Shown here piece by piece: positions 4,416 through 60,745 of a stretch of DNA of 64,000 nt (positions within the stretch are counted from its first letter, which is position 1; each line of letters opens with the position of its first letter). Made by a program: the position numbers and the translations under genes. The DNA lies in the IMG/VR virus record IMGVR_UViG_3300025162_000016, positions 186,001-250,000 of that record; one strand, written 5' to 3'. The notes beneath the pieces were generated by a model. It searched no databases. It was not told the DNA's origin and was given only the letters and a program-made list of their open reading frames with translations.

Positions 4416-4600
4416 TAAATAGTTTCAGTTATATCATGAACTACCCACCCGCTAAAGCAAGTGGGTTTCCCCGCTTGATTAGTTTCTGAGTTTCGTGGTT
4501 CACAGACTTGATTACTCTCTCTGTTTTACCAGATACCATCCTCGACGCCTCCCCACGTTTTTGTTTATCGTGCGATTTGATTCCCAAACCACACAAACCT
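4416..4600 (-). ncRNA. predicted TnpB omegaRNA (scaffold to 4436, then guide GATATAACTGAAACTATTTA)
   Basis: Known TnpB architecture: RNA overlaps the gene 3' end and right end; 5' boundary approximate. Confidence 0.6.
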
Positions 4601-5799
4601 TGTTTTAATATATTCAGGGACGCATTATAGTCCCTATCGTGATGAATGTTACAAATAGGACAATCCCATTCTCTATCACCCTTCTTTAATGATTGGTTTA
4701 TGTATCCACAATCATTACAGGTTTTAGAAGATGGAAACCATCTATCCACTTGGATGAACTTCCTATCGTTCCATTCACTCTTATATTTGAGTTGTCTAAC
4801 AATCTCATACCAAGATACTTCTTGTATTGACCTTGCTCTCCTATGGTCTTTCATCATATTGATTATACTTAAATCTTCCATACAGATTATTGCGTTGTTT
4901 TTGACAATATCATTAGTAAGTTTATGAGTATAATCCATTTTTACATTAGTTATCTTTTCGTATGTTTTTGCTAACTTAACTCTTGCTCGTTCTCTATTCT
5001 CACCTTTCTTTGTTTTCTTGGAATGCTGTCTTTGTTGGTATTCCAGTTTCTTTCGATATTTCTTTGCTATTCTTGGATTGGAAATCTTTTTACCATCGGA
5101 GAAAGTCATCAGGTCAATCAATCCTAAATCAATACCTACACTTTTATTTGTCTCCTTGACTTTAAGTGTGAAATCTTCCTCAACAATGAATGATACAAAA
5201 TACTTGTTAGTTTTGGTTTTGGAAATGGTGAGGAAACAAATCTCATAGTTTTCTCCAAATGGTCTATGTTGGTTTACCTTAATTGCTTTCAATTTAGGAA
5301 TAGTCAATAGTCCATTCTCAAAAGTAAAATGTTGAGGAATACAGAATGATTGTTTATCGTATTTGGATTTGAAAGATGGGAAGGACGCAATCTTTTTGAA
5401 GAACCTTTGGTATGCTACATCAAGTTGTCGTAATGATTGTTGGAGAGATTGACTATTGACTTCGTTCAACCATTCAGTATCTTTATCCTCTTTCAATGCC
5501 ACAAGAAGTTTAGCCGTATCGTTGTATCCTATTCCTTTTCCATTTTTGAGGTAATGGTCTTTTCGGGCATTAAGAAAGTAATTAAAGACGAAACGGGAAC
5601 AGCCAAAGGATTTAGCAAAGAAGGTCTTTTGTTCTTCGGTTGGAAGAACTGGAAACTTATATCCTCTGGTTATTCTTTTTGTTGTCATCAAGTATAAGTA
5701 TATCGAAGATTTACAAAAAGTTATTTTATTTGTAAATATCTTCATTTTCAATGGGTCGCATTCATCCCATCCCCTAAAGGAGATGGGTTTTATGCTCCC
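4436..5799 (-). mobile_element. non-autonomous IS200/IS605 (IS1341-like) element, TnpB only
   Basis: Subterminal hairpins CCCATCTCCTTTAGGGGATGGG (left end) and CCCACTTGCTTTAGCGGGTGGG-TAGTTCAT (right end); left boundary uncertain by 1-2 nt. Confidence 0.85.
4441..5688 (-). CDS. tnpB: TnpB RNA-guided endonuclease
   Basis: RuvC D/E/D (GIDLG, MEDL, DRDYNA), CNDC/CPIC zinc ribbon; start re-placed at MTTKR. Confidence 0.95.
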   Translation of the reverse strand: MTTKRITRGYKFPVLPTEEQKTFFAKSFGCSRFVFNYFLNARKDHYLKNGKGIGYNDTAKLLVALKEDKDTEWLNEVNSQSLQQSLRQLDVAYQRFFKKIASFPSFKSKYDKQSFCIPQHFTFENGLLTIPKLKAIKVNQHRPFGENYEICFLTISKTKTNKYFVSFIVEEDFTLKVKETNKSVGIDLGLIDLMTFSDGKKISNPRIAKKYRKKLEYQQRQHSKKTKKGENRERARVKLAKTYEKITNVKMDYTHKLTNDIVKNNAIICMEDLSIINMMKDHRRARSIQEVSWYEIVRQLKYKSEWNDRKFIQVDRWFPSSKTCNDCGYINQSLKKGDREWDCPICNIHHDRDYNASLNILKQGLCGLGIKSHDKQKRGEASRMVSGKTERVIKSVNHETQKLIKRGNPLALAGG

Positions 5800-18094: not shown

Positions 18095-18981
18095 GATTTT
18101 TTCGGAATATTTTCTAAGAATTCCCGTTTATTATCGTACAGCCAATCTACAGTTGTTTTATACCCCTTTGCTCGTTCTAAGTTATCTAATACGGCATCTA
18201 TTTTGGATTCATATAGTTCTTTGGTAAGCGTCGGTAGGATTTTTCCTAGTTCATCTAGGGTTTCAAACCGAACAATTCCAGCCGGATTGAAAAATTTTTC
18301 TAGACATTTACTACCACAAAATACGGGTATAGTTCCTACAACCATCGCATCGGTTACTTGTTCCGAAAACCAATCATCTATATTAGTATTTGGAATAATA
18401 ATAGAAAACCTATAAGGAGCTAACGCTATAATTTTACCCATTCCCGAGGGAAGATATGTGTCTAATATGTTGTTAAAACCACGTCCGAATACTTCAATTT
18501 TATCTCCAAATCTTTCCACCACGTCGTATCGCATTTTATGTCCGGTAATCCATCGTTTTTGAGACACTATAATTGATACGTTACGTTCTTTTTCATAATT
18601 TCCATAATCTTCTGGCGCAATACCTTGTACGCAGAAATAAATCCAATGAAATTTGTCTTTTCCTACCCAGTTTTCTATAAAACGATATGATGTAAAAACG
18701 TAATCAAAATGCTGGTGATTTTTTTCTAGCCATTTATAGGGATGAAACATGTTTGGATCGAACTGTCCAGCATTATCGTAAATAGTAGGGACTTCTTCCA
18801 TCAAAGCTATTTTGATTTTACCGTTATAATTGACATGTTCTGGAAGTCGCTTGTCTTCGAAAATATGAACATCGCCATTCTTATTTCCAGTATACCAATC
18901 CCATGCTTTTTTGGAGGGAGGAACCCAATGCTGAATTCCTTCCCATGTATCCATTCCTGTATGTGCGGTGATTATGTTCAT
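18091..18981 (-). CDS. GT10-like (alpha-1,3-fucosyltransferase-like) protein
   Basis: YRFSI.I.N...DWFSEQ..DA...GTIPVF.G, a degenerate GT10 motif. Confidence 0.7.
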   Translation of the reverse strand: MNIITAHTGMDTWEGIQHWVPPSKKAWDWYTGNKNGDVHIFEDKRLPEHVNYNGKIKIALMEEVPTIYDNAGQFDPNMFHPYKWLEKNHQHFDYVFTSYRFIENWVGKDKFHWIYFCVQGIAPEDYGNYEKERNVSIIVSQKRWITGHKMRYDVVERFGDKIEVFGRGFNNILDTYLPSGMGKIIALAPYRFSIIIPNTNIDDWFSEQVTDAMVVGTIPVFCGSKCLEKFFNPAGIVRFETLDELGKILPTLTKELYESKIDAVLDNLERAKGYKTTVDWLYDNKREFLENIPKKS

Positions 18982-29838: not shown

Positions 29839-32481
29839 TCATAGTTTTTCTAATTTCTTTTTTGTTTCTTCGAGTTTAGTTTCAATCGCAACCTGATCGA
29901 TTGTAGGAACCTCAAATCCCATGTTTTTATCTAACATAAAATTGCCTACATGATCTTTTACCGAATACAATCCAAACGATTTAGATGGTTTCCAATTATG
30001 GAATACATATTCCATTGCATCCACATATTGCTTACACATATTAGTGGCATTTATCCCGCCTTCATTGCACGCCCAACGTCTACCTTCGGCCCCACATTTT
30101 TCTCGCATTGATTTAGACATTTTATACCAATACATATATGCATCCGCAATATCTTCCCATTTCGTTAGATCATCGAAAATATACGGAGTAGGAATACTAC
30201 CTTGAATCATTCTAGTAACTGGCCACAAAGGATATGCCCAAACCCCATGATTTTTATATTTTCCCTCGCTATTAGAACCAAATCCCTGACTAAATTTAAT
30301 CGGATTTCCTTCATCGTCGGTTTGACCAATTTGATCTTGAAGACCACCCGTAACTGATACTATTACCGGAGTCTCACACATGATACTTTCAGCACATGAT
30401 AGTCCATAGCCTTCATTCGAATTATGCAAAATAAATGATTTCATGGTATAAGAATTGTCTTCTTCTACCTCAATATTATATACTTTTCCGGTATAAAGAT
30501 ACTTCTCGATTTTATTTATCGACATCAAATAATATCCGTCTTTAAACCAACTTCTGGATGAATCATTATCATCACTGGTATGAGTAAAATATATTTGATG
30601 ATGAGTATTTCCGGGTTTATATCCAGATGTTCCTTCCGCTAAGCGGATTTTTTTATTCAATCTTACCAGTGCGGTTATTAACTGTTGTTGAAGAACATTG
30701 GAAACAGTAACGATTTTAGTATAGTTACTATCGTTCGTATGACCATCGTATCCATCGGAATCTATAAGGCCATTTATGAATGAATTTAGGATAGTTTCAT
30801 CTTTATTAAACAATATTTCCGATGGAATTTTTTTGGTGTTAGAACTGTTTCCACATATTGTTTTGAAAAAGTTTTCCATTATACCTATAAATGGATGGGA
30901 GAAAAATAAATTAGTGCATTTTTTGTTTTTTTGACCATGGGGTTTAATGGAATAACTTCCACCGAATATATTCACAAAGATATTTCCTATCTTATTGATT
31001 TCATCGTTACCATAATCAGAATTAAAACATATATTATTGTTTGATCCATCTCCGCACCATCTTCCTAAGAGATATGCTAAATCGTTGGTCAGTGGAATTT
31101 TTCTATTTAATACATTTTTACTGTGGGGAAGAAATATTTCAGAATCATTGGACAAATACTTTCTGCTTTTGTATTCGGGAATGAATTTTTCCAAATCAAA
31201 AACCACATTTTCGGTCATATTTTCTGTGAGTTTTGGATACATTACTAAATCTCCCGGTGATAATTCTCCGGATGGAATCCATTCCATATATTGTTGAATT
31301 GACTCGTTTTCGTTCAACAATTTATTTTTCATTTTACTTTTCTTTACCGCCCACACTTTATGTTCGGAGGTAAGTTCCAATGGTTCATTTAAGTTAAATG
31401 GAGTAATTTTAACCATTTCACAGTCAACATTATCATATTCAAATGTTTTTAGTACTGGACGAAATCTTCCTTTATGCGTCAAAACGGTTTCTCCAATTTT
31501 TATTTCTTCAATATTTTTGGGTCCGATTTTAGTTGTTACTTTATAACCCGGTGGAATACAAGATGCATTCACAGTGACATCTGCCATGCTATAAAGATAT
31601 GCCATTTCTTCTGGCGGCATTTTTGCGGGAGAAAAAATTATATCATAATCCGGACATAACGCTTCTTTTACTGCAATTAAATTCGTCCCCGCCTCTTGCA
31701 TTATTTCGGTGTGAAGTAACAAACAACATTTTGCCGCTTCTTCTTTGGGAAGATTATCACAGAAAGTGCGGTAACCTAATATAATGTTGCTAGTGCGTTT
31801 TCGTTGAACATTTCTACTATTGTAAAAAATAACGAAATCGTATTTTTTTCCATTAAAAACCGCTTTTCTGCGATCTCTATATTCTTGTGTAGTAGAATCT
31901 TTTTTATGAAACATATCTTCATTGATTCCATGCGGAACATAATGAAGAAGTGTTTTTCCATTCATTGGTTCATTGATGGTACAACAATTCTTAGGATCAA
32001 GAACCCATTTATTAATATTTTCTGTTTGTCTACTAATGGATAGTAATGCATCGCAGCTTTCATAGAACGCTCGATTATACATTGGATACGGAATGTCATC
32101 CCAGATGTTATAATATGTAATCGGGAGTTTTTTACGTAAACTATGTTCCAATGAGAAAAGCCATCCAAAAAATCTTGGATCGGTAATCATGCAAATGGCA
32201 TCGGGGCGTTCTTGATTAATAATAGAATGTAAAATATTTTCATTGCCATATCCATCGACCGGATAAAGTTTTATATATGCATCATTTATTTTTCTAAGTT
32301 GATTTGTTGCTTGTGATAAATCTAAAACCTTTCCGGTGTCTGGATTTTTAATTGCCCCGGCAATACAACAAAAATCATATTTATGCGCACACCCCAGAAT
32401 CATTTCTCGCCCCATAGTTGCAACCCCCGAATGCATTCTTATATCATCTCCAATCCAAAGTATTTTTTTCTTATTGCTCAT
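29839..32481 (-). CDS. GT4-like glycosyltransferase with intein
   Basis: HSGVAT, VPHGI, SRN..RK, AS|SNEGYGLSCAES (ExxxxxxxE). Confidence 0.9.
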   Translation of the reverse strand: MSNKKKILWIGDDIRMHSGVATMGREMILGCAHKYDFCCIAGAIKNPDTGKVLDLSQATNQLRKINDAYIKLYPVDGYGNENILHSIINQERPDAICMITDPRFFGWLFSLEHSLRKKLPITYYNIWDDIPYPMYNRAFYESCDALLSISRQTENINKWVLDPKNCCTINEPMNGKTLLHYVPHGINEDMFHKKDSTTQEYRDRRKAVFNGKKYDFVIFYNSRNVQRKRTSNIILGYRTFCDNLPKEEAAKCCLLLHTEIMQEAGTNLIAVKEALCPDYDIIFSPAKMPPEEMAYLYSMADVTVNASCIPPGYKVTTKIGPKNIEEIKIGETVLTHKGRFRPVLKTFEYDNVDCEMVKITPFNLNEPLELTSEHKVWAVKKSKMKNKLLNENESIQQYMEWIPSGELSPGDLVMYPKLTENMTENVVFDLEKFIPEYKSRKYLSNDSEIFLPHSKNVLNRKIPLTNDLAYLLGRWCGDGSNNNICFNSDYGNDEINKIGNIFVNIFGGSYSIKPHGQKNKKCTNLFFSHPFIGIMENFFKTICGNSSNTKKIPSEILFNKDETILNSFINGLIDSDGYDGHTNDSNYTKIVTVSNVLQQQLITALVRLNKKIRLAEGTSGYKPGNTHHQIYFTHTSDDNDSSRSWFKDGYYLMSINKIEKYLYTGKVYNIEVEEDNSYTMKSFILHNSNEGYGLSCAESIMCETPVIVSVTGGLQDQIGQTDDEGNPIKFSQGFGSNSEGKYKNHGVWAYPLWPVTRMIQGSIPTPYIFDDLTKWEDIADAYMYWYKMSKSMREKCGAEGRRWACNEGGINATNMCKQYVDAMEYVFHNWKPSKSFGLYSVKDHVGNFMLDKNMGFEVPTIDQVAIETKLEETKKKLEKL
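30421..31560 (-). mobile_element. intein with LAGLIDADG homing endonuclease (380 aa)
   Basis: CIPPG start, LTSEH, LLGRWCGDG and INGLIDSDG motifs, ILHN|S end. Confidence 0.92.
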
Positions 32482-33376
32482 TTATCAGTTCTCCTTTTCT
32501 ATTAAAAACCATTTTTTGAAATTTAAATCCTGCATCTAGAATTGATTGTTTTTTAAGATAAAGATTTTTATCAATTCTATTGGTCCATGTGGATTTTACT
32601 TCTACTATTAAATTATCCAATTTTATAAAAATATCCGGAAAATATCTATGTTTTATATTATCTGGCGTATGATACCAGAAAGCTGGCATCTTTGATCTTG
32701 ATACTTCAATATCCGTTTCCTTGTATATTTTTAAAAGTGCATTTATAGCCATTGGCTCGTATCCCTGGATTTTAACTTCCTTCCCAGACGGTAAAATGAA
32801 TTTTTTCATTTTAAACTTTTGCTGCCGTGTATGTATTTCGGAAACCTGTGAAACACTTTCTACTCCATATTTTTTTAAATTAGTATTTTTACATTTCTCT
32901 CGATTTGTATAATTTTTAGTTCCGTGGTTTTTGATACAAGTGGCGTTTTTCTTTTCTAAGACGGATGGTATTTGTAATACATGAGATACTCCGTATTTTT
33001 TAATATTATTAATTTTTCGTGTTTCTTTGGCGGATTTTATTTGGCCATTCCATTTTACTCCATGTTTTTTATAATTAGATTCATTTATTTTTTGTAATCT
33101 GTACGGATGTTTAGATGCGCATTTATCGGAACAAAAAACTGAGTACCCTTTTAATAAACCTTTAAACCCCCTTCCTTCTAATAGTTTATTGCAATTTAAA
33201 CAAAATTGTTCCCCATAAATGTGTTTATATATTTTTTCAGAAATATTACGTCCCAAATAAGCATCGTTAATAAATTTATATGTTGCCGGATGATATGCTT
33301 TAAGTGTACGATAATATAAACGAGTATTTTGTTTGGCTATTGATAATATTTTCTCGTTGGATAATATATCATTCAT
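32471..33376 (-). CDS. free-standing putative homing endonuclease (PD-(D/E)XK/TnsA-like) with KKYGV repeats
   Basis: CxxC/CxxxC, four N.KK(Y/H)G repeats, HRYFPDIF...IVEVKS. Confidence 0.75.
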   Translation of the reverse strand: MNDILSNEKILSIAKQNTRLYYRTLKAYHPATYKFINDAYLGRNISEKIYKHIYGEQFCLNCNKLLEGRGFKGLLKGYSVFCSDKCASKHPYRLQKINESNYKKHGVKWNGQIKSAKETRKINNIKKYGVSHVLQIPSVLEKKNATCIKNHGTKNYTNREKCKNTNLKKYGVESVSQVSEIHTRQQKFKMKKFILPSGKEVKIQGYEPMAINALLKIYKETDIEVSRSKMPAFWYHTPDNIKHRYFPDIFIKLDNLIVEVKSTWTNRIDKNLYLKKQSILDAGFKFQKMVFNRKGELINEQ

Positions 33377-33545
33377 AGGATTTGGCGTTTAATGATCCGC
33401 TGATTGTGGTTCTAATGAAAGATAAACAAGTGTTTGTTATCCATTTTCCAATTATTAGATTTCGTGGGAAACAATAATCATGAATTATTTTGTATTCTTT
33501 TTCAGAAACGTTGACCATGTGCCGTTTGATATGTGATTTTTTCAT
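33369..33545 (-). CDS. small putative RHH-like regulator (58 aa, not in ORF track)
   Basis: MKKSHIKRHMVNVSEKEYKIIHDYC...; starts 3 nt after TATTTATT box, overlaps endonuclease start. Confidence 0.6.
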   Translation of the reverse strand: MKKSHIKRHMVNVSEKEYKIIHDYCFPRNLIIGKWITNTCLSFIRTTISGSLNAKSYE

Positions 33546-33606
33546 GACAATAAATAGTGTTTACATTTGTAAAATCATTTTTATTTTTGTAAAATCTTAT
33601 TTATAT

Positions 33607-35330: not shown

Positions 35331-36080
35331 GTGAAACAAATTATCTTTTTTCTAATGTTCCTTGTGCTTGGGATAACTATTCTCAATGCAGAAGAGTTTA
35401 CTACCGGTGGGGTATATGTTCAAGTTGCAACTACAAATTCAATTTGTAATTTAATTGGTAGAACCACTAATCATGTAGAACCTCTTATAATCGGCAAAAC
35501 ATATCGACTTGAAACCGACCTCATGGAGATTAAAACAAAAATCGGAGAAACCATTATATTGGCATTATCCACCGGATTGCAAGTAAAAGTATCCCCAAAT
35601 TCATTTTTCTCGGTAGATACCTTTAATCAATTAGTTGTAAATAATGAAAGTCAGCCTGCTTTACTTAAATCGGAATATGCTATTACGGCATTATCTCTTT
35701 TAGACGGTGATATAGAGGTAATTTGCCCAAAAATCGACACTAATTCTCAATGTATTCTACAAACTCCATTGGTTAACTTGACATTAACAAAATGTAAACT
35801 TTCAATTAGATCTAATTTAAAATATGTTATTTTAAATGCTATTGAAGGTGGGGTAACTGTAGTAGATTCGAAGAATAAACAGACCTTTATCGATAAAGGT
35901 AATTTGGGATTGATTATTCAGTATCCTGGTAGAGAAGGTGAAATAATGGTGACTCAGAAAGCTATTTCTCCGGATGAACTGCAAAAAACAACTAAATCTA
36001 TTGATGAACTTGAGAATTATGCGAAAGAAGTGTTGTTTGTGGTAATGGATAAAAAGGTTATTGGGATTCGGTTAAAATAA
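35331..36080 (+). CDS. exported FecR-like domain protein
   Basis: Signal peptide; beta-rich, with L.L.DG, TPL and IEGGVTV motifs. Confidence 0.55.
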   Translation: MKQIIFFLMFLVLGITILNAEEFTTGGVYVQVATTNSICNLIGRTTNHVEPLIIGKTYRLETDLMEIKTKIGETIILALSTGLQVKVSPNSFFSVDTFNQLVVNNESQPALLKSEYAITALSLLDGDIEVICPKIDTNSQCILQTPLVNLTLTKCKLSIRSNLKYVILNAIEGGVTVVDSKNKQTFIDKGNLGLIIQYPGREGEIMVTQKAISPDELQKTTKSIDELENYAKEVLFVVMDKKVIGIRLK

Positions 36081-36728
36081 GTTGCTATGCGGGGATATTC
36101 TGATATTGTGGGAAGATATGGAAATATTAGAATCGACGGATTGTGGAAAACATGATGTTAAAAACATTAAATTTTCACGAGTTTGGGCAATGCCGAACTC
36201 TGATACGTTTAAAGTCAAGCCCATTGGCGAGTTTGTTAAAAAATATCTTGACAAATCGAAAGTAAGTGTAGATTCTTTTGCTCGGAATAATTCATGGTGT
36301 TCCTATACGAATGATATTAATCCTACCACAATTGCCCAATATCATTTAGATGCGGAAGCATTTCATTTGGAATTAGTTAAAAAGGAGATTAAATGTGATT
36401 TATGGGTGTTTGATCCGCCATACTCTCCACGGCAATTAAAAGAATGTTACAATAGTTTTGGCAGAAAAATGCAATTGGAGGATGGACAAACGGCAAGACT
36501 TCGTAAAATATGGAAAGCCACTATGGTTCCGGTGTTAGCATTGGATGCGGTGGTTTTATCTTTTGGATGGAACACGGTTGGAATGGGTAAGAAATTGGGG
36601 TTATCAACTGATGGATTAAATGTTACAATTCTTACAAAATTCTAAAATAATTTATAACTTCAACACAATAAATAATAAAATATTTACTTTTTTATGATTT
36701 TCTACTTTTTACTTTATACTTATATCAT

Positions 36729-36887
36729 ATGGGAAGAAAACGAAAAAATATAACTTATGCACAATTACTTGCGGGTGGACGCTTGCGATCCCGCAAATAT
36801 TATAGTGAAAATAAAGAAGAATGTAAACGAAAAGCATTGGAGAGATATTATTCTATAAAAAATGCTTCTATTACTCCCAAATCATAA
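36729..36887 (+). CDS. small basic protein inside IS (52 aa, not in ORF track)
   Basis: MGRKRKN...RKYYSENKEECKRKALERYY; stop abuts tnpB ATG; TACTTATA box 4 nt upstream. Confidence 0.7.
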   Translation: MGRKRKNITYAQLLAGGRLRSRKYYSENKEECKRKALERYYSIKNASITPKS

Positions 36888-38120
36888 ATGCCTAAATTTC
36901 TAAAAGGATATAAAATTGAATTGGCCCCAAATAAGTGTCAGATGACATTGTTTAGAAAGCATTTTGGAGCCAGCAGATTCGCATTTAATTGGGCGTTACA
37001 AAAGAAAAAAGAAGCATTTGATAGGAAAGAAAAGATTCCGAACAATATTGAATTGCATAGAGAGTTGAATAAACTTAAGGGAACGGATGCCTTACCTTGG
37101 GCTTACGATGTTAGTAAAGTCGCATTTCAGTCGGGTTTAATTAACTGTGATAGAGCATTTCAGAATTTCTTTAATCGTTGTAAGAAAAAAGTCAAAGGGA
37201 AGAAGGGATTCCCAAAATTTAAGTCAAAGAAGAATGAGACACAATCATTCAAATTAGATGGTTCGATATACTTGACAGATAAATCTCACATTAAATTACC
37301 TCGTATTGGTAAAGTCAAGTTAAAAGAATTGGATTACATTCCAATCGATACTGAAATCAAATCAGTAACAATTAGTCGTAAAAGCAGTAAATGGTTCGTA
37401 TCTTGTTTGGTAGAATCTGATATTAAGATGCTCCCACAGACAGATAAGAAAGTTGGAATTGATTTAGGAATTAAGACCTTAGCAACCTGTTCTAATGGGA
37501 CTAAATATGAGAATCCCAACGCATTAAAATTCAATTTACGAAAATTAAAGAGAAAACAACGTCAGTTAAGTAGAAAAAAGAAAGGAAGTCAAAATTATAA
37601 AAAATCAAAGTTAAAACTTTCTAAGTTACATAATAGAATTTCTAACATAAGGAAAGATTCGTCGCACAAAGCGACTTCAAAAATAATTAACGAAAACCAA
37701 GTAATTGTTATTGAAGGATTGAAGATTTCCAATATGTTAAAAAATCACTGTCTTGCTCAGGCAATTAGTGATATGTCTGCCCATGAATTTCGCAGACAGT
37801 TAGAATATAAGGCAAAATGGTATGGTCGTGAAATCATTATTGCCGATACTTACTTTCCATCTAGCAAGACTTGTTCGTGTTGTGGATGGAAGAATGATAA
37901 TCTCACATTGAAAGATAGAATTTTCAAATGTGAGATTTGTAAGAATGAGATGGATAGAGACTTGAATGCCTCTAAAAATCTTGAGAAACTTTCTACCGTC
38001 AGTTCGACGGGAATTTACGCCTTGGGAGATGGGAGTTCGGTTTGTCCAGCAATGGATAAATCTAGCCCGTCGTTGAAAAAGGAATCTAACGGAAAATTTA
38101 CATACACCCTAAAAAGATGA
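36888..38120 (+). CDS. tnpB: TnpB RNA-guided endonuclease (IS607-type)
   Basis: GIDLG, IEGL, DRDLNA; CSCC/CEIC zinc ribbon. Confidence 0.95.
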   Translation: MPKFLKGYKIELAPNKCQMTLFRKHFGASRFAFNWALQKKKEAFDRKEKIPNNIELHRELNKLKGTDALPWAYDVSKVAFQSGLINCDRAFQNFFNRCKKKVKGKKGFPKFKSKKNETQSFKLDGSIYLTDKSHIKLPRIGKVKLKELDYIPIDTEIKSVTISRKSSKWFVSCLVESDIKMLPQTDKKVGIDLGIKTLATCSNGTKYENPNALKFNLRKLKRKQRQLSRKKKGSQNYKKSKLKLSKLHNRISNIRKDSSHKATSKIINENQVIVIEGLKISNMLKNHCLAQAISDMSAHEFRRQLEYKAKWYGREIIIADTYFPSSKTCSCCGWKNDNLTLKDRIFKCEICKNEMDRDLNASKNLEKLSTVSSTGIYALGDGSSVCPAMDKSSPSLKKESNGKFTYTLKR

Positions 38121-38170
38121 ATGTAAATTTTTGTAAGTTTAGAAGAACGGTTTGCAATCGTTGAAATAAT
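37990..38170 (+). ncRNA. predicted TnpB omegaRNA (scaffold to 38150, guide TTTGCAATCGTTGAAATAAT)
   Basis: GC-rich hairpins CCGTCAGTTCGACGG and GATGGG...CCCGTC overlapping tnpB 3' end. Confidence 0.65.
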
Positions 38171-38227
38171 GATGGTTTGTCACGGAGCGGATCATAATGA
38201 CACTATTTGTATGGCAGAAAAAAGAAT

Positions 38228-38692
38228 ATGACATTTGAGGAAGTAAAAGAACTTGGTATCATTTATCATCACAAATTCGTGGTGTTGCAACAGATGAATA
38301 TTATCATTCAGGAATTGATTAAACGGGCGCAAGATCATGATAATAGTAAATTTTCGGAAGAAGAGTTTCCCTTCCTTGTTAAGGCAATGGATGATTTACA
38401 CAAGGTTCAATTTGGAACTCCGGAATATGCGGAAGTGAGAGAAAAGTGGTCTGGTTTATTTAATTCCCATTATAAAAAGAATAGCCATCACCCAGAATTC
38501 TATCCAAATGGGATTGAGGATATGAATCTTTTAGATTTAGTGGAGCTATTATGTGATTGGAAAGCGGCATCTATGCGGAAAGAGAATGGTGGAACAATTT
38601 CAAATTCTATTCGAGTAGGCACAGAAAGATATGGATTAAGTTCTCAGTTAGTAAAAATACTTGAAAATACCGCACGGGCATGTAAGATGTAG
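38228..38692 (+). CDS. HD-like protein (DUF5662-like)
   Basis: HDNSK, HY..N.HHPE, ELLCDW; ATGA overlap with the restored methyltransferase stop. Confidence 0.75.
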   Translation: MTFEEVKELGIIYHHKFVVLQQMNIIIQELIKRAQDHDNSKFSEEEFPFLVKAMDDLHKVQFGTPEYAEVREKWSGLFNSHYKKNSHHPEFYPNGIEDMNLLDLVELLCDWKAASMRKENGGTISNSIRVGTERYGLSSQLVKILENTARACKM

Positions 38693-38744
38693 TCGTAACA
38701 ATTTGAAGTTTAAAATTTAAAATTTAAATCATAATAGGATATTT

Positions 38745-41396
38745 GTGTACGTTAATATTTGGGTAGACAGAAGAAACGAAATTGTCCATGTATGGGACGA
38801 CGAGAAGGGATGCGTTAATTTTCCGCTTGAAGCGATCCGATTTGCTTATAAAAAGAATCCAGCCGGTGAATATGTTTCTTTATACGGAGATCGTCTCGAA
38901 GAGGTTATGTATTATGATGATAATGATCATTCTCTCCTCGAATCAGATGTTCCAATAGAATTAAAAACTTTAAGTAAATTGTATGAGGATAGTGATGAAG
39001 TTTCAGAGACTACTGCTATTGGGGTAATTGATATTGAAGTTGATTCTACCGGAGGATTTCCGAATATTGAAACGGGAGACAAGGCCATTACTGCGATTGC
39101 GTTGTACGACACGTCTACTGAGACATTTTGGTCATTTGTGCTTGATCCCGATAAAAAAATTGTTTCTCGCACTGAGCGCACCAAACTAAATTCATCTGAT
39201 ACTAAAGATTATGAATGGAATATTAACTCTTATAAATACGAAGACGTTTTATTAAGAGCATTTTTGAGTAAATGGGAAGAATGTAATTTTAGCATTGTCT
39301 CTGGATGGAACTGTAATGGGTTTGATTTGCCCTATATTTATAATCGAATTCGTGCTGTGTTAGGTAAGAAGGCGGGGTATCGACTATCGACAATTGGAAT
39401 GTGTTATTTACACAAATTTTCCAAAACAATGCGAATTGCGGGAATGTCTTGTCTTGATTACCTTGATCTTTATAAAAAGTTTATTGGTAAAGATCAGCCA
39501 ACATTTGCATTAAATTATATTGGACAGGAAGAAGTAGGAATTGGAAAAATACCATATCGTGGCAGTTTAGTTACTTTGTATAAAGAGGATTTGGATCGAT
39601 ATGTTGAATATAATTTAAATGACGTTAAAATTGTAGTAGCATTGGAGAAAAAATTAGATTTCATTTATCTTGCACGGTCGGTATGTCACAAAGGACATGT
39701 TCCTTATGAATGGTATATATATTCTTCTCGTTGGATTGACGGGGCGTTATTAACTTATTTACATCGTAAAAAATTAATAGCTCCTAATAAACCAGTTGGA
39801 GGGAAAGAAGAATATGAAGCGATGAAAGAGGAAGGTGCAGAAGGGTTTGAAGGCGCATATGTAAAAGATCCGGTGCCGGGGCTCTATGATTGGGTGTATT
39901 CCGCAGATGTCACTTCTTTGTATCCCAGCACTATTATGTCCCTAAATATTTCTAGTGAGACTAAATTTGGGAAGATAGAAAATTGGGATACGGAAAAATT
40001 CGTTAATGGAAAAATAGGGGCGGTATCTATAGGAGAAACGCATTATACTGAAGAAGAATTTAAAGAATTAATTAAAGATGGAAAATATAGTATAAGTTCT
40101 AACGGCATTCTTTATTCTCAGGATATTATGGGAATTGTTCCTTCCATTCTTAATATATGGTTTTCGGAGCGTGTGGAATTTAAAGCACTGGCGGAAAAAT
40201 ACAAAAACGAAGGTGATAAAGTCAAAGAACTATTTTATGATAGACGACAAAAGCGGCAAAAAATCTTCATGAATAGCGTCTACGGCACACTAGGACTTCC
40301 GATCTTCCGATTCTATGATAAGGATAATGCCGAGGCAACCACGGTCTCCGGGCAGCATGTTATCAAGATGACCGAACGGTTTGTTAATATGAAATATGCC
40401 GATAAATTTGCTGATAAAGGCGAGATAACTAACGATGATTTTGTCATATATATTGATACCGATAGCGTTTACATGTCAGCTAAACCCTTGCTTAATTTAG
40501 ATAAAAAATCTACGGAAGTAACTGATGATACTATTCAGTATGTTATTGATTTGTCCGTGGAAATGTCTAAAGGAATTAACGAATTTTATGAGTTTGCAAT
40601 TCCTGCCATGTTCAACTTGAATAAACATCGAATAAAAATCACGCCGGATGTTATTACTACAACTACATTGTGGATCAAGAAAAAACGATATGCCATGATG
40701 AAAGTGTATGATATGGAAAAACAACGTAAAGTATTAGATAAAGACGGGACTTTAGGGAAATTGGAAGTTAAAGGTATTGATGTAGTGAGAACTTCATTTC
40801 CGGCTCGATTTCGTAAATTTTCAGGAGAACTTTTGAACATGATCCTGCGTAAGGTTTCAAAAAACACGATTGATGATAGAATTCTTGTAATGGAACGAGA
40901 AATTAAAACATTGCCGGTGGATGAAATTGCAAAAAACACTTCTGTAAATTTTATTAGTCGTAAAGGAGATGCAAATTACAATCCTCCGGATAGAAAGATG
41001 TTTACTGTTCCTACCTCTAAAACTCCTCCTCAAGTAGGAGCCGCTATGATGTATAATGACATGTTAAAGAAATTCGGTTTACAAAAACAATATGAGCCAA
41101 TTCATAACGGTCAAAAAATTAAATGGGTGTATTTGAAGGAGAATCCACATGCTTTAGATTATTTGGCTATTAAAGCAGATGGGACTGATCCTGATGAAAT
41201 CCTAGAAATTATTAATACTTATGTAGATCGTAAACAGATGTATGAACGAGAATTGAAAACAAAAATTGCCAAGTTCTATGCGGTGTTGAAATGGATATAT
41301 CCCTCATTTACTGCTAGACTTGCAGATTCTTTTTTCAAATCAAAAACGGTTTCCGTTCCAGTCGTTCCTAAATTGGATGACGAGGAAGAAGAATAA
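38745..41396 (+). CDS. polB: family B DNA polymerase (T4 gp43-like)
   Basis: DIE, GWN...FD, YN..D exonuclease motifs; DVTSLYPS, K...NSVYG, YIDTDS. Confidence 0.97.
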   Translation: MYVNIWVDRRNEIVHVWDDEKGCVNFPLEAIRFAYKKNPAGEYVSLYGDRLEEVMYYDDNDHSLLESDVPIELKTLSKLYEDSDEVSETTAIGVIDIEVDSTGGFPNIETGDKAITAIALYDTSTETFWSFVLDPDKKIVSRTERTKLNSSDTKDYEWNINSYKYEDVLLRAFLSKWEECNFSIVSGWNCNGFDLPYIYNRIRAVLGKKAGYRLSTIGMCYLHKFSKTMRIAGMSCLDYLDLYKKFIGKDQPTFALNYIGQEEVGIGKIPYRGSLVTLYKEDLDRYVEYNLNDVKIVVALEKKLDFIYLARSVCHKGHVPYEWYIYSSRWIDGALLTYLHRKKLIAPNKPVGGKEEYEAMKEEGAEGFEGAYVKDPVPGLYDWVYSADVTSLYPSTIMSLNISSETKFGKIENWDTEKFVNGKIGAVSIGETHYTEEEFKELIKDGKYSISSNGILYSQDIMGIVPSILNIWFSERVEFKALAEKYKNEGDKVKELFYDRRQKRQKIFMNSVYGTLGLPIFRFYDKDNAEATTVSGQHVIKMTERFVNMKYADKFADKGEITNDDFVIYIDTDSVYMSAKPLLNLDKKSTEVTDDTIQYVIDLSVEMSKGINEFYEFAIPAMFNLNKHRIKITPDVITTTTLWIKKKRYAMMKVYDMEKQRKVLDKDGTLGKLEVKGIDVVRTSFPARFRKFSGELLNMILRKVSKNTIDDRILVMEREIKTLPVDEIAKNTSVNFISRKGDANYNPPDRKMFTVPTSKTPPQVGAAMMYNDMLKKFGLQKQYEPIHNGQKIKWVYLKENPHALDYLAIKADGTDPDEILEIINTYVDRKQMYERELKTKIAKFYAVLKWIYPSFTARLADSFFKSKTVSVPVVPKLDDEEEE

Positions 41397-59423: not shown

Positions 59424-60745
59424 AGGAAGGAAACCCCAACGGCTTTAGCCTTGGGGAGGAATTCCGACCACTTCCAATATCCTACTATAGTTTAATCCTA
59501 ATGTCAATAAATTCTTTCAGTGTATGAAAATATTTGATGTTTTGAGATTTTTGAACCATACTTATATTGGATGAGTAAATTAACTTACAACACAAGAATA
59601 ATCTTTGAGAATCAACTCGACAATAATAAAATTGTTGCAATGATGGATTCTCAACTATTTGCATGGAACGAGTGTTCTAAAATTAAATTCTCATCAGTAA
59701 CTAAAAATTCCATTGTCGAACTGCATTCTAAATTCTATAAATCTTTCCGAGAGAATAACCCCGATATTCCATCTCAAGTTGTAATTTCTGCCGAACAATC
59801 AGTTCTATCTTCTTACCGATCAATTAAATCAAATAAACATAAAATTAAAACTGCCATTGTTAAGAAAAATCCATCTATTCGATTAGATAAAAGAACATAT
59901 TCCTATAAAAATGGAGTTTTTAGTATAATTTCACTAGAAAAAAGAGTTAAATGTAAACCATTCTTATTTCCAAAACTACAAGAATTAATATCTAAATATT
60001 CTTTTTGCGATCCATTATTATTTATACGAAAAGATGAAGTCTGGATTTCTCTTACTTTTAACATTCCCGTTTTATTACCCACCAAGATACTAGCCATTGG
60101 AGTTGATTTAGGTTGCATAAATTTAGCAGCAACTAGCGAAGGTAAATTATATAAAGATAAATCGTTTAACGCTAGAAAACGACAGTTGAGACATTTAAAA
60201 TCATCATTAAAATCCAAAGGTACTAAATCCTCTCGTAAACATTTAATTAAATTACATCACAAAGAACATAATATAAATAAAAATTTATCGCATCATTTAG
60301 CAAATATAATCATTAAAGATACCACTGCGGATGTGATTGTCCTAGAAAACTTAAAGTCATTAAAAGTAAAAAAACATAAGTATCAGAATAAAAATAGAAT
60401 TTCTCAAGTTCCTATGTTTGAATTGAGAAGAATACTTACCTATAAGGCACTCCTGTCTAATAAACAGGTGATAACAGTTAGTCCATCGTTCACTTCGCAA
60501 ATTGACCATAGAACCGGAAAATTGGATGGTCAAAGAATTGGTGGTAGGTATATCGGAAAAGATGGTCAGATATTACATGCGGATATAAATGCTGCATGTA
60601 ATATAGGATTACGTTCCAAACACCCATGCTCAATAAGAAATTATTATGTATGGCAGGCGACAGTCAATTCGCCAATCGTATGTAAATCTTCTGCTAGTAG
60701 AGAAGTATTACAAGCCCCTATCCCTTTAGGGTAGGGGTTGTTGAC
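59424..60745 (+). mobile_element. non-autonomous IS200/IS605 element inserted after TTAG
   Basis: Left-end hairpin CCCCAACGGCTTTAGCCTTGGGG; right-end hairpin CCCCTATCCCTTTAGGGTAGGGG-TTGTTGAC; removal restores a stop for the HNH gene. Confidence 0.9.
59571..60734 (+). CDS. tnpB: TnpB RNA-guided endonuclease lacking zinc-ribbon cysteines
   Basis: GVDLG, VLENL, HADINAA; TSQIDHRTG replaces CxxC. Confidence 0.92.
   Translation: MSKLTYNTRIIFENQLDNNKIVAMMDSQLFAWNECSKIKFSSVTKNSIVELHSKFYKSFRENNPDIPSQVVISAEQSVLSSYRSIKSNKHKIKTAIVKKNPSIRLDKRTYSYKNGVFSIISLEKRVKCKPFLFPKLQELISKYSFCDPLLFIRKDEVWISLTFNIPVLLPTKILAIGVDLGCINLAATSEGKLYKDKSFNARKRQLRHLKSSLKSKGTKSSRKHLIKLHHKEHNINKNLSHHLANIIIKDTTADVIVLENLKSLKVKKHKYQNKNRISQVPMFELRRILTYKALLSNKQVITVSPSFTSQIDHRTGKLDGQRIGGRYIGKDGQILHADINAACNIGLRSKHPCSIRNYYVWQATVNSPIVCKSSASREVLQAPIPLG

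What the first reader, a model, noticed from the sequence alone, without database searches (positions are those of the whole stretch)
36118..38231. IS607-type TnpB element cleanly splits a DNA methyltransferase-like gene
Seen: removing 36601-38150 restores the frame (KKLG|FAIVEIM…EKRI*) and an ATGA overlap with the next gene; both halves are otherwise intact. The target is TGGGG and the predicted guide is the methyltransferase 3' coding sequence. Known: IS607 recombines at GG cores and excises precisely. Inference: a recent insertion, reversible by TnpA in trans, with TnpB cutting intact alleles.
Basis: partly seen in the sequence, partly recalled or inferred. Interest (0 to 1): 0.6.

Follow-up and report, generated by a model that had tools for sequence, protein, structure and literature searches.

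The report
TnpB transposon splits jumbo-phage methyltransferase-like gene
A 1,550-base mobile element that has lost its own transposase but keeps an intact RNA-guided nuclease (TnpB) splits a small methyltransferase-like gene of a 369-kb lake phage; sister phages carry the unbroken gene, so this is a clear natural case of a known element type, not a new one.

Summary
Window 36601-38150 is a discrete 1,550-bp insertion after TGGGG (36596-36600) and ending in GG (38149-38150). Sister-phage contigs 99.6% identical in both flanks carry the exact empty site and an uninterrupted 187-aa gene with the same ATGA overlap to the next gene. About 1,500 homologues keep the C-terminal CHG..HND motif.

The IS607 call is supported indirectly. 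This copy has no tnpA. Its closest relatives (TnpB 86-90% identical, same ends) are full elements with a small ORF, a MerR+resolvase serine TnpA and tnpB, inserted at GGG| and ending in GAACGG.

TnpB has its catalytic residues and zinc finger, and is under purifying selection. A conserved, covarying RNA fold overlaps its 3' end, as an omega-RNA would.

The same tnpA-less element (98.2% identical) sits at a second locus, in the phage's diversity-generating retroelement (DGR), in a sister strain. That site is empty here, so the element moved after losing tnpA.

Not shown: cleavage, homing, the TAM, or an in-genome cognate TnpA; the three resident serine TnpAs are only 32-38% identical. Every intact allele seen differs from the predicted guide at position 4.

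It is a new member of a known kind, of moderate interest.

The parts
36118..36600 (+). N-terminal 161 codons of the split methyltransferase-like gene (DPPY motif). In this genome the frame runs on 14 codons into the element and stops at 36643-36645.
   Evidence: PHROG 11619 'DNA methyltransferase', E 2.5e-23. 1,527 homologues of about 170-200 aa. 99% identical to the intact alleles P0001 and P0121.
36596..36600 (+). Target motif and predicted TAM (TGGGG). The GG at 36599-36600 is the presumed crossover core.
   Evidence: Sequence. Left flanks of five independent insertions of the subfamily all end in GGG: TTGGGG, GAGGGG, ATGGGG, AAAGGG, TGAGGG. Published IS607 target and TAM is 5'-TGGG (10.1101/2023.11.20.567912).
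36601..38150 (+). Non-autonomous (tnpA-less) IS607-family element of 1,550 bp. With GG at both junctions the boundary could equally be written two bases to the left.
   Evidence: Absent from near-identical strains. The same 1,550-bp element, 98.2% identical, sits at another locus in L134.
36601..36653 (+). Left end, conserved with the full element L019 (TTRWCAACTG ... AATGTTAYAATTCTTACAAAATT). CTTACAAAATT is an inverted copy of AATTTTTGTAAG near the right end and is a possible TnpA binding site.
   Evidence: inverted repeat I3. The binding role is inferred.
36654..36728 (+). AT-rich, promoter-like stretch that stands where relatives carry the small ORF and tnpA.
   Evidence: No similarity to L018 or L019 here. 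About 70% identical to the own genome at 18.6 kb, where it lies upstream of a zinc-finger repeat ORF. Sigma-70-type matches are not above chance.
36729..36887 (+). 52-codon ORF abutting tnpB. Whether it codes for a protein is doubtful.
   Evidence: No Pfam, PHROG or NCBIfam match. One paralogue in the genome, 44% identical, E 1e-6. Between the two element copies it has 0 synonymous and 2 nonsynonymous changes. Atlas search uninformative.
36888..38120 (+). tnpB, 410 aa, an RNA-guided nuclease with intact RuvC and zinc-finger motifs.
   Evidence: Pfam HTH_OrfB_IS605, OrfB_IS605 and Cas12f1-like_TNB. Full-length alignment to ISDra2 TnpB 8H1J/8EXA, E 4e-67. D192, E276, D356/D358, CSCC329 and CEIC348 present. 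dN/dS 0.05-0.11 against relatives. 23 synonymous and 2 nonsynonymous changes against the second tnpA-less copy.
37891..38150 (+). Predicted omega-RNA scaffold, a structured RNA over the tnpB 3' end and the right end. Its 5' limit is approximate. The last hairpin is at 38093-38131.
   Evidence: MFE -68.7 kcal/mol, z -4.0, 0 of 200 shuffles as good. A 6-sequence consensus has 74 pairs, 7 of them with compensatory double changes. No Rfam family matches.
38151..38166 (+). Predicted guide template, TTTGCAATCGTTGAAA, the first 16 nt after the right end. The length is assumed from other TnpBs.
   Evidence: By position only. At least 10 different sequences follow GAACGG in relatives. The only exact match in the genome is this junction, which is preceded by CGG rather than GGG. 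Intact alleles read TTTTCAATCG..., a mismatch at position 4.
38151..38231 (+). C-terminal 26 codons plus stop of the split gene (FAIVEIMMVCHGADHNDTICMAEKRI*).
   Evidence: It carries the most conserved motif of the family.
38228..38692 (+). Downstream DUF5662 gene, whose ATG overlaps the split gene's stop (ATGA).
   Evidence: Pfam DUF5662, E 3.4e-31. Same arrangement in the empty-site strain L133.

Best explanation
Window 36601-38150 is a non-autonomous IS607-family insertion sequence in a 369-kb freshwater jumbo phage. It went in at a GG core just after TGGGG, inside a small conserved gene for a class-I methyltransferase-fold protein with a DPPY motif. The insertion separates the last 26 codons, which carry the family's most conserved motif, so the gene is most likely inactivated.

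The element has lost the small ORF and the serine recombinase tnpA that its closest relatives carry. In their place is a 230-bp AT-rich segment with a doubtful 52-codon ORF, similar to one other place in the same phage. The element keeps both ends, an intact tnpB and a structured RNA over the right end.

Inferred mechanism: transcription through the right end gives an omega-RNA whose guide is the first ~16 nt of the methyltransferase-like gene's 3' fragment. TnpB with this RNA would recognise GGG(G) followed by that sequence. That combination exists only in an uninterrupted allele. At the occupied site the guide match follows CGG, so the element would not cut itself. A cut allele in a co-infecting or replicating sister genome would be repaired from the occupied copy, which copies the element in (homing). 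New sites would be reached only when a cognate serine TnpA acts in trans.

Shown: the insertion and its boundaries, the natural empty sites, the IS607-type relatives, the intact and selected tnpB, the conserved RNA fold, and movement after tnpA loss. Inferred: the guide and TAM, cleavage, homing, and loss of methyltransferase function.
For: - **Boundaries and empty sites:**
- **Full relatives:** a small ORF, a MerR+Resolvase TnpA and tnpB, with matching ends.
- **Target and ends:** GGG at 5 of 5 left flanks, and GAACGG followed by at least 10 unrelated flanks.
- **No target-site duplication:** empty site ...TTGGGG|TTTTCAATCG..., occupied junctions ...TTGGGG|TTATCAAC... and ...GAACGG|TTTGCAATCG....
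- **TnpB:** domains and catalytic residues present; dN/dS 0.05-0.11.
- **Second locus:** the same tnpA-less element sits in the phage's DGR in sister strain L134, with the exact empty site in this genome at 117320. The two copies differ in tnpB by 23 synonymous and 2 nonsynonymous changes.
- **RNA:** structured and covarying 3' region.
- **Polymorphism:** the occupied ORF is on 22 contigs and the intact ORF on at least 39.
- **Literature:** IS607 TnpA needs GG, prefers TGGG and excises without a scar, and TnpB cuts the donor joint and drives homing (10.1101/2023.11.20.567912; review PMC13565253).
Against: - There is no RNA data, and no run on record as RNA holds the stretch. So the omega-RNA, its ends and the guide length are predictions.
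- No cleavage or TAM assay exists.
- All intact alleles found differ from the predicted guide at position 4. The element may therefore be unable to home into the alleles that now exist, or the change arose after insertion.
- TnpB scores higher against the IS200/IS605 model (368.5 bits) than against the IS607 model (294.8 bits), both below their cut-offs. Of its 35-48% relatives that have a transposase gene nearby, nearly all have a Y1 one. A G-rich TAM would be unusual for that clade.
- No cognate tnpA is in this genome.
- No empty-joint contig was seen in the four runs laid, but contigs drop rare variants.
Confidence: 0.7

Rival explanations
1. It is an inert passenger. The element is a stranded, non-functional relic at this locus. 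TnpB and its RNA are not made or do nothing here, and occupancy simply drifts with the phage lineage.
For: There is no tnpA in the element and no cognate tnpA in the genome. There is no expression data. The gene appears dispensable, since it is also broken at another site in L016. Known empty alleles mismatch the guide.
Against: TnpB has 23 synonymous against 2 conservative changes between the two tnpA-less copies, and dN/dS is 0.05-0.11 against relatives. The catalytic residues are intact. The same element has reached a second locus with exact, scarless junctions. The RNA fold is conserved with covariation.
Confidence: 0.15
2. It is a partly domesticated phage weapon or gene drive. By swapping tnpA for a phage-type upstream module, the phage lineage now expresses TnpB on its own schedule. 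TnpB would then act mainly as an RNA-guided homing or exclusion nuclease against co-infecting sister phages that carry the intact allele.
For: The segment that replaces tnpA resembles another intergenic region plus short ORF of the same phage, upstream of a zinc-finger repeat ORF. The element is co-oriented with the surrounding operon. The genome holds 13 tnpB-like genes. Only guide-mismatched empty alleles are seen: one of just 2 mismatches in 2,321 nt of right flank falls at guide position 4.
Against: The similarity of the upstream module is modest (about 70% DNA, 44% protein over 41 aa) and there is only one other copy. Promoter-like matches are not above chance. The 52-codon ORF shows no sign of constraint. 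There is no co-infection or expression data. The position-4 difference could be a chance linked polymorphism (roughly p 0.01-0.04 by my estimate from the counts).
Confidence: 0.1
3. It is an IS200/IS605-type element moved by a Y1 (HUH) transposase, as the TnpB family scores suggest.
For: NCBIfam scores IS200_TnpB above IS607_TnpB. The best solved homologue is ISDra2 TnpB. Of the 35-48% relatives with a transposase gene nearby, nearly all sit next to Y1 TnpA. One Y1 gene exists in the genome.
Against: Every relative at 85% or more that has a transposase carries a MerR+Resolvase TnpA directly upstream of tnpB. Insertion is at G-rich GGG| sites with ends in GG, not after an AT-rich tetra- or pentanucleotide.
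Confidence: 0.03
4. It is an IStron-like element. It splices out of the mRNA, so the methyltransferase-like protein is still made.
For: The element has the same orientation as the host gene and its boundaries are exact. IS607-family IStrons exist.
Against: Rfam at E up to 1 finds no group I or group II intron, or anything else, in 35800-38800. Only 128 nt lie between the left end and the first ORF, and that stretch is AT-rich. Relatives sit in non-coding places and in a tRNA gene.
Confidence: 0.02

Closest known systems
IS607-family elements with TnpA_S and TnpB (Clostridium botulinum CboIStron and its intron-less IS607 neighbours; Zedaveinyte et al., 10.1101/2023.11.20.567912)
   Same: GG core. 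G-rich TGGG-type target that doubles as the TAM. No inverted repeats and no target-site duplication. Scarless empty site. The omega-RNA overlaps the right end with its guide taken from the flank. Copies without TnpA coexist with full copies.
   Different: There is no group I intron. This copy has no tnpA and carries an unrelated 230-bp segment instead. The host is a jumbo phage, not a plasmid or chromosome. The TnpB is closer to IS605-type TnpBs by sequence.
ISDra2 TnpB of Deinococcus radiodurans (IS200/IS605; PDB 8H1J, 8EXA)
   Same: The closest natural solved homologue: full-length alignment at E 4e-67, the same domain order, RuvC acidic residues and zinc finger.
   Different: ISDra2 moves by a Y1 TnpA and has the AT-rich TAM TTGAT (my own knowledge). 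Here the partner transposase in relatives is a serine recombinase and the flank motif is GGG.
IS607 TnpBs guided by RAGATH-18-derived RNAs (Cell Res 2024, PMC11061315; TAMs AGGAG or GAGGG as given in PMC13565253)
   Same: IS607 context and a G-rich TAM. GAGGG is the actual left flank of L018, and L134's flank ends GAGGGG.
   Different: No RAGATH-18 or any other Rfam match at the right end. The RNA scaffold here is a different, uncurated one.
Phage homing endonuclease genes, intron-borne or free-standing (e.g. T4 Seg and Mob)
   Same: A selfish nuclease gene, polymorphic among near-identical phages, placed in a conserved gene. It is expected to spread in co-infections by cutting the empty allele, and resistant target variants are expected.
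   Different: Target recognition would be by an RNA guide plus a TAM, not by protein. The host gene is not repaired by splicing. Homing here is untested.

Membership tests
IS607 family insertion sequence | Serine recombinase TnpA (MerR-type HTH plus resolvase catalytic domain) encoded in the element | tested here: not met
   This copy has none. Relatives L018, L019, L065 and L136, with TnpB 86-90% identical, have a serine TnpA directly upstream of tnpB, confirmed as MerR+Resolvase in L019 and L136. It is therefore a non-autonomous derivative of an IS607-type element.
IS607 family insertion sequence | Inserted at or after a GG dinucleotide, and the element terminates in GG | tested here: met
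   TGGGG|element...GAACGG|. The same holds in L018, L019, L134, L136 and more than 10 right-end copies.
IS607 family insertion sequence | No terminal inverted repeats of the usual kind and no target-site duplication | tested here: met
   Comparison of empty and occupied sites at two loci shows no duplicated target beyond the shared GG. Only a short subterminal inverted motif is present.
IS607 family insertion sequence | Precise (scarless) presence and absence | tested here: met
   Natural empty alleles equal the two flanks joined, at the methyltransferase-like gene (L015, L133) and at the DGR locus (own genome against L134). Excision itself was not observed.
TnpB / OMEGA RNA-guided nuclease | HTH, RuvC (D-E-D) and zinc-finger architecture | tested here: met
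   Pfam; NCBIfam guided_TnpB at 318 bits against a cut-off of 100; alignment to ISDra2 TnpB and motif positions.
TnpB / OMEGA RNA-guided nuclease | Structured omega-RNA over the tnpB 3' end and right end, with the guide read from the flank | tested here: inconclusive
   The fold has z -4.0 and 7 covarying pairs in 6 sequences, and the flanks are variable. There is no RNA data and no Rfam family.
TnpB / OMEGA RNA-guided nuclease | A TAM next to the left end is required for cleavage | not testable with these tools
   Only the flank consensus GGG (5 of 5) is available.
IS200/IS605 family | Y1 (HUH) TnpA, and insertion 3' of an AT-rich tetra- or pentanucleotide | tested here: not met
   Close relatives carry a serine TnpA and the targets are GGG. 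Only distant TnpB relatives sit next to Y1 TnpA.
IStron (group I intron fused to IS605/IS607) | Group I intron at the 5' part of the element | tested here: not met
   Rfam cmscan at E up to 1 gave no match in 35800-38800.
Class-I SAM-dependent methyltransferase (the split gene) | Rossmann-like methyltransferase fold with a (D/N)PP(Y/F) motif and a SAM-binding glycine loop | tested here: inconclusive
   The AF2 model of the intact allele has pLDDT 89. Foldseek hits are RsmD/YhhF, TrmN and RlmI-type methyltransferases at E about 1e-5 and TM 0.42-0.54. DPPY is invariant. The usual GxGxG loop is replaced by the conserved D-x-F-A-R-N. No Pfam match. The DNA substrate rests on labels only.

The most novel reading that the evidence does not exclude
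A jumbo-phage lineage carries a transposase-free, RNA-guided gene drive. An IS607 element swapped tnpA for a phage-type upstream module. It now persists through TnpB and omega-RNA cleavage of intact alleles during co-infection. That would have swept the guide-matching (GCA) alleles and left only guide-mismatched (TCA) empty alleles in the lakes. The same cassette has also been seeded into the phage's diversity-generating retroelement.
Probability: 0.25. Interest if true: 0.7.

Novelty: new member of a known kind. Interest (0 to 1): 0.45.

Why it matters
TnpB homing has been shown in bacteria with engineered constructs. Natural populations that hold occupied and exactly empty sites in otherwise 99.6%-identical genomes are what is needed to see whether these nucleases really drive their elements in the wild.

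This locus offers:
- two polymorphic sites for one tnpA-less element;
- a predicted guide and TAM;
- a candidate resistant allele, with a single mismatch at guide position 4;
- full-length relatives with the cognate serine recombinase in the same lake series.

It also shows a 369-kb phage carrying 13 tnpB-like genes, and a TnpB of IS605-like sequence working with IS607-type ends. For annotation, the gene at 36118-36645 should be marked as the 5' part of a gene interrupted by a mobile element, not as a separate short gene.

Tried and rejected
- **Rfam on 35800-38800:** no match, so there is no intron, no RAGATH-18 and no curated omega-RNA family.
- **Phage GenBank collection, blastn:** only weak TnpB-level hits (Lak phages, Staphylococcus phages) and no close phage.
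- **Reads:** only Logan contigs were available and no RNA runs. No contig with the empty joint was seen in runs X1, X2, X4 or X5. That does not show absence, because contigs drop minor variants.
- **Right-end pattern in 185,579 prokaryote genomes:** no match. The best bacterial TnpBs are no more than about 60% identical, so no host could be named.
- **The 52-codon ORF:** no Pfam, PHROG or NCBIfam match, and an uninformative Atlas search. I treat it as doubtful.
- **Promoter and terminator scan:** nothing above chance.
- **Gene neighbourhoods of two distant homologues of the split gene:** no conserved partner, so no functional clue.
  - I did not build or search a joined (spliced) protein or DNA model of the split gene. 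Natural intact alleles made it unnecessary.
  - I did not type out the 273-column structure string for the count of structure pairs, nor build a covariance model.
  - Complex prediction and the large representative search were not needed.
Full report
**Setting.** The window is bases 186001-250000 of a 368,758-bp virus record with direct terminal repeats. It is about 34% G+C and comes from lake and freshwater metagenomes. The locus lies in a + strand block: a 249-aa ORF, the split gene, a DUF5662 gene, then a family-B DNA polymerase.

**The observation.**
- The sequence shows an ATG at 36118 and a reading frame that follows its homologues up to ...GMGKKLG at 36600.
- It then runs 14 unrelated codons to a stop at 36643-36645.
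- At 38151 the frame FAIVEIMMVCHGADHNDTICMAEKRI* resumes. Its TGA at 38229-38231 overlaps the ATG at 38228 of the DUF5662 gene.
- I did not build a joined model.
- That search found 1,527 homologues of about 170-200 aa. The sequences read and the 38 aligned all continue with F.i.EI..VCHGA.HN.T.C.AE.
- In the 38-sequence alignment this short C-terminal piece holds much of the family's invariant and near-invariant positions.

**Natural intact alleles.**
- The 90% cluster around P0001 holds intact proteins of 187-194 aa. One of them, P0121, is on at least 39 contigs.
- Its 179-kb contig (L133) is 99.63% identical to the window over 2,990 nt to the left of the site and 99.61% over 2,321 nt to the right. 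It has the same gene order and the same ATGA overlap.
- The empty site reads AAATTGGGG|TTTTCAATCGTTG. The occupied junctions read AAATTGGGG|TTATCAACTG and AGAAGAACGG|TTTGCAATCGTTG.
- The insertion is thus exactly 1,550 bp, with no target duplication beyond the shared GG.
- The occupied form is also in a second IMG/VR contig (L017), in contigs of four laid runs from two studies, and as the truncated ORF on 22 contigs. Both alleles are common, and the insertion is real and recent.
- The genome has no second copy of the gene.

**What the element is.**
- It carries a 410-aa TnpB with HTH_OrfB_IS605, OrfB_IS605 and Cas12f1-like_TNB domains.
- TnpB aligns over its full length to ISDra2 TnpB at E 4e-67. 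The RuvC acidic residues (D192, E276, D356/D358) and both CxxC pairs are present.
- There is no transposase gene in the element.
- By sequence TnpB looks more like the IS200/IS605 type (NCBIfam 368.5 against 294.8 bits). Of its 35-48% relatives that have a transposase gene nearby, nearly all have a Y1 one.
- The close relatives decide the family. L018 (90% aa), L019 (87%), L065 (86%) and L136 (same 90% cluster) are full elements, as far as their contigs reach. They run: left end, a small ORF of 57-64 aa, a 209-212-aa MerR-HTH plus Resolvase TnpA, tnpB, right end.
- L019 shares the left-end sequence with the window, and the right ends of L019, L065 and L136 closely match it.
- All five left flanks end in GGG: TTGGGG, GAGGGG, ATGGGG, AAAGGG, TGAGGG. 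Every right end ends in GAACGG and is followed by at least ten unrelated sequences.
- These are the published hallmarks of IS607: a GG core, a TGGG-type target that is also the TnpB TAM, no inverted repeats, no target duplication and scarless joints (10.1101/2023.11.20.567912; PMC13565253).

**What replaced tnpA.**
- Window 36654-36887 has no similarity to the relatives.
- It resembles one other place in the same phage, at genome ~18.5-18.7 kb. The AT-rich stretch is about 70% identical and the short MGRK... ORF is 44% identical. There it lies upstream of a zinc-finger repeat ORF.
- The 52-codon ORF has no family match. It shows 0 synonymous and 2 nonsynonymous differences between the two element copies, so I doubt that it codes for a protein.

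**The element moved after losing tnpA.**
- Contig L134 carries the same 1,550-bp element (98.2% identical, 28 substitutions, no indels). Its flanks match this phage at genome 116511-117320 (99.0%) and 117318-118866 (96.4%).
- That places it between the bAvd and reverse-transcriptase genes of a diversity-generating retroelement.
- The junctions are GAGAGGGG|TTATCAACTG and GAAGAACGG|TGTTAATATTC. This genome has the exact empty site GAGAGGGG|TGTTAATATTC.
- Between the two copies tnpB differs by 23 synonymous and 2 conservative nonsynonymous changes. Against the full elements dN/dS is 0.05-0.11. TnpB has therefore stayed under purifying selection in the tnpA-less lineage.
- The genome's own three serine TnpAs are only 32-38% identical to the cognate type and have a different N-terminal domain. 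Movement most likely needed a cognate TnpA from a full element elsewhere. L136 comes from the same sample series as L133 and L134.

**The guide RNA.**
- The last ~260 nt (37891-38150) fold far better than shuffles: -68.7 kcal/mol, z -4.0, 0 of 200 shuffles as good.
- In six relatives 7 of 74 consensus pairs show compensatory double changes. These include stems beyond the tnpB stop codon.
- Rfam has no matching family.
- By analogy with characterised TnpBs, the guide would be the flank TTTGCAATCGTTGAAA (38151-38166) and the TAM the GGG(G) before the left end.
- In the occupied genome the only match to the guide is preceded by CGG, which would spare the element's own site.
- All of this is inference. 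No RNA run holds the locus.

**A pattern worth testing.**
- Every intact allele found has TCA (Ser) where the occupied allele has GCA (Ala). That is position 4 of the predicted guide.
- It is one of only two mismatches in 2,321 nt of right flank. By my estimate that is roughly p 0.01-0.04 for a chance hit in a 16-nt window.
- Either guide-matching alleles have been converted and mismatched ones persist, or the change arose after insertion in a dead gene fragment.

**The split gene.**
- PHROG 11619 and one NCBI record call the family a DNA or adenine methylase. Pfam has nothing.
- An AlphaFold model of the intact allele (pLDDT 89) matches class-I SAM methyltransferases of the RsmD/YhhF, TrmN and RlmI kind, at E about 1e-5 and TM 0.42-0.54.
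- DPPY is invariant, but the glycine-rich SAM loop is replaced by a conserved D-x-F-A-R-N.
- 'Methyltransferase-like' is fair. The substrate is unknown.
- The gene is probably dispensable. A third haplotype (L016) has it broken at another position by a different insertion.

**Rivals.**
- An inert relic is disfavoured by the selection on tnpB and by the second locus.
- An IS605-type element is disfavoured by the relatives' TnpA and the G-rich targets.
- An IStron is disfavoured by the absence of any intron model.
- Partial domestication as a phage-phage weapon is possible but rests on weak similarity of the upstream module.

**Verdict.** This is a new, well-documented member of a known kind (IS607-derived TnpB element) in an unusual host, a jumbo phage. 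It comes with natural empty sites that make homing directly testable.

Noticed in passing
whole genome G000; in the window 4441-5751 (-) and 59571-60734 (+): The 369-kb phage holds 13 tnpB-like ORFs in three sequence clades, three serine TnpAs of about 200 aa (one abutting a tnpB at genome 76127-77946) and one Y1 TnpA (genome 321904-322191). Two further tnpB genes lie in this window.
   Followed up: partly
genome G000 117320 (outside the window); L134:809-2359: The same tnpA-less element sits between the bAvd and reverse-transcriptase genes of the phage's diversity-generating retroelement in a sister strain. The site is exactly empty in this genome. The insertion lies about 300 nt after a repeat also present at genome 114914 and 116375 (a likely template or variable repeat) and might disable the retroelement.
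   Followed up: partly
window about 36445/36446; L016:3207-3311: In a 99.6%-identical contig the same methyltransferase-like gene is broken at a different place, after ...CAATTAAAAGAAT, by unrelated AT-rich DNA that opens a new ORF (MFSKKRNFTKKIYS...). The contig ends 100 nt later, so the inserted element is unknown.
   Followed up: partly
window 32503-33577: A DUF7487 gene (301 aa, - strand, 32471-33376) with its surroundings is absent from contig L016, which joins genome 218502 to 219578. It looks like another presence/absence selfish gene.
   Followed up: no
window 40469/40470; L133:5296-5564: The empty-site strain's DNA polymerase B gene stops matching the window after 40469, and its product has a weak Intein_splicing hit. 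It may be an intein or insertion that this genome lacks.
   Followed up: no
window 36654-36887 and genome G000 18525-18740 (-): The AT-rich stretch plus the short MGRK... ORF occurs twice in the genome. The second copy lies directly upstream of a 303-aa zinc-finger repeat (DUF4379) ORF with a ...DYWHGNP... C-terminus. It may be a shared expression module for selfish genes.
   Followed up: partly
L019:1166-3314; L065:1480: Related full elements also hit genes precisely. L019 splits a DUF7487 / Vsr-like gene in frame (..YMPLKRV|AIECNGIYWHS). L065's right end abuts GTTCAAATCCCAC...CCA, which reads like the T-arm and 3' end of a tRNA gene.
   Followed up: partly
L057, L062, L063, L066, L068, L069, L071; run X1 record 4 at window 37929: Derivatives made of RNA-coding parts only. 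A solo ~130-nt right-end remnant with a shortened hairpin sits at one site in seven contigs. One contig has an L018-type left end fused directly to the last ~220 nt of the element, like a MITE.
   Followed up: no
L018:2197-2382; L019:1239-1433; L136:607-780: A conserved small ORF of 57-64 aa (MY.YMK..PKMI.RVTKTEFETDDG...EEFQRIYDEWFRLFQQKGL) precedes the serine tnpA in all full elements and has no Pfam match. It may be an uncharacterised accessory protein of this IS607 subfamily.
   Followed up: no
L015:822-903: The last ~80 nt of the 903-bp Logan contig with the empty site are GC-rich and unrelated to the phage, probably an assembly chimera. The empty site itself is confirmed independently by L133.
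   Followed up: yes
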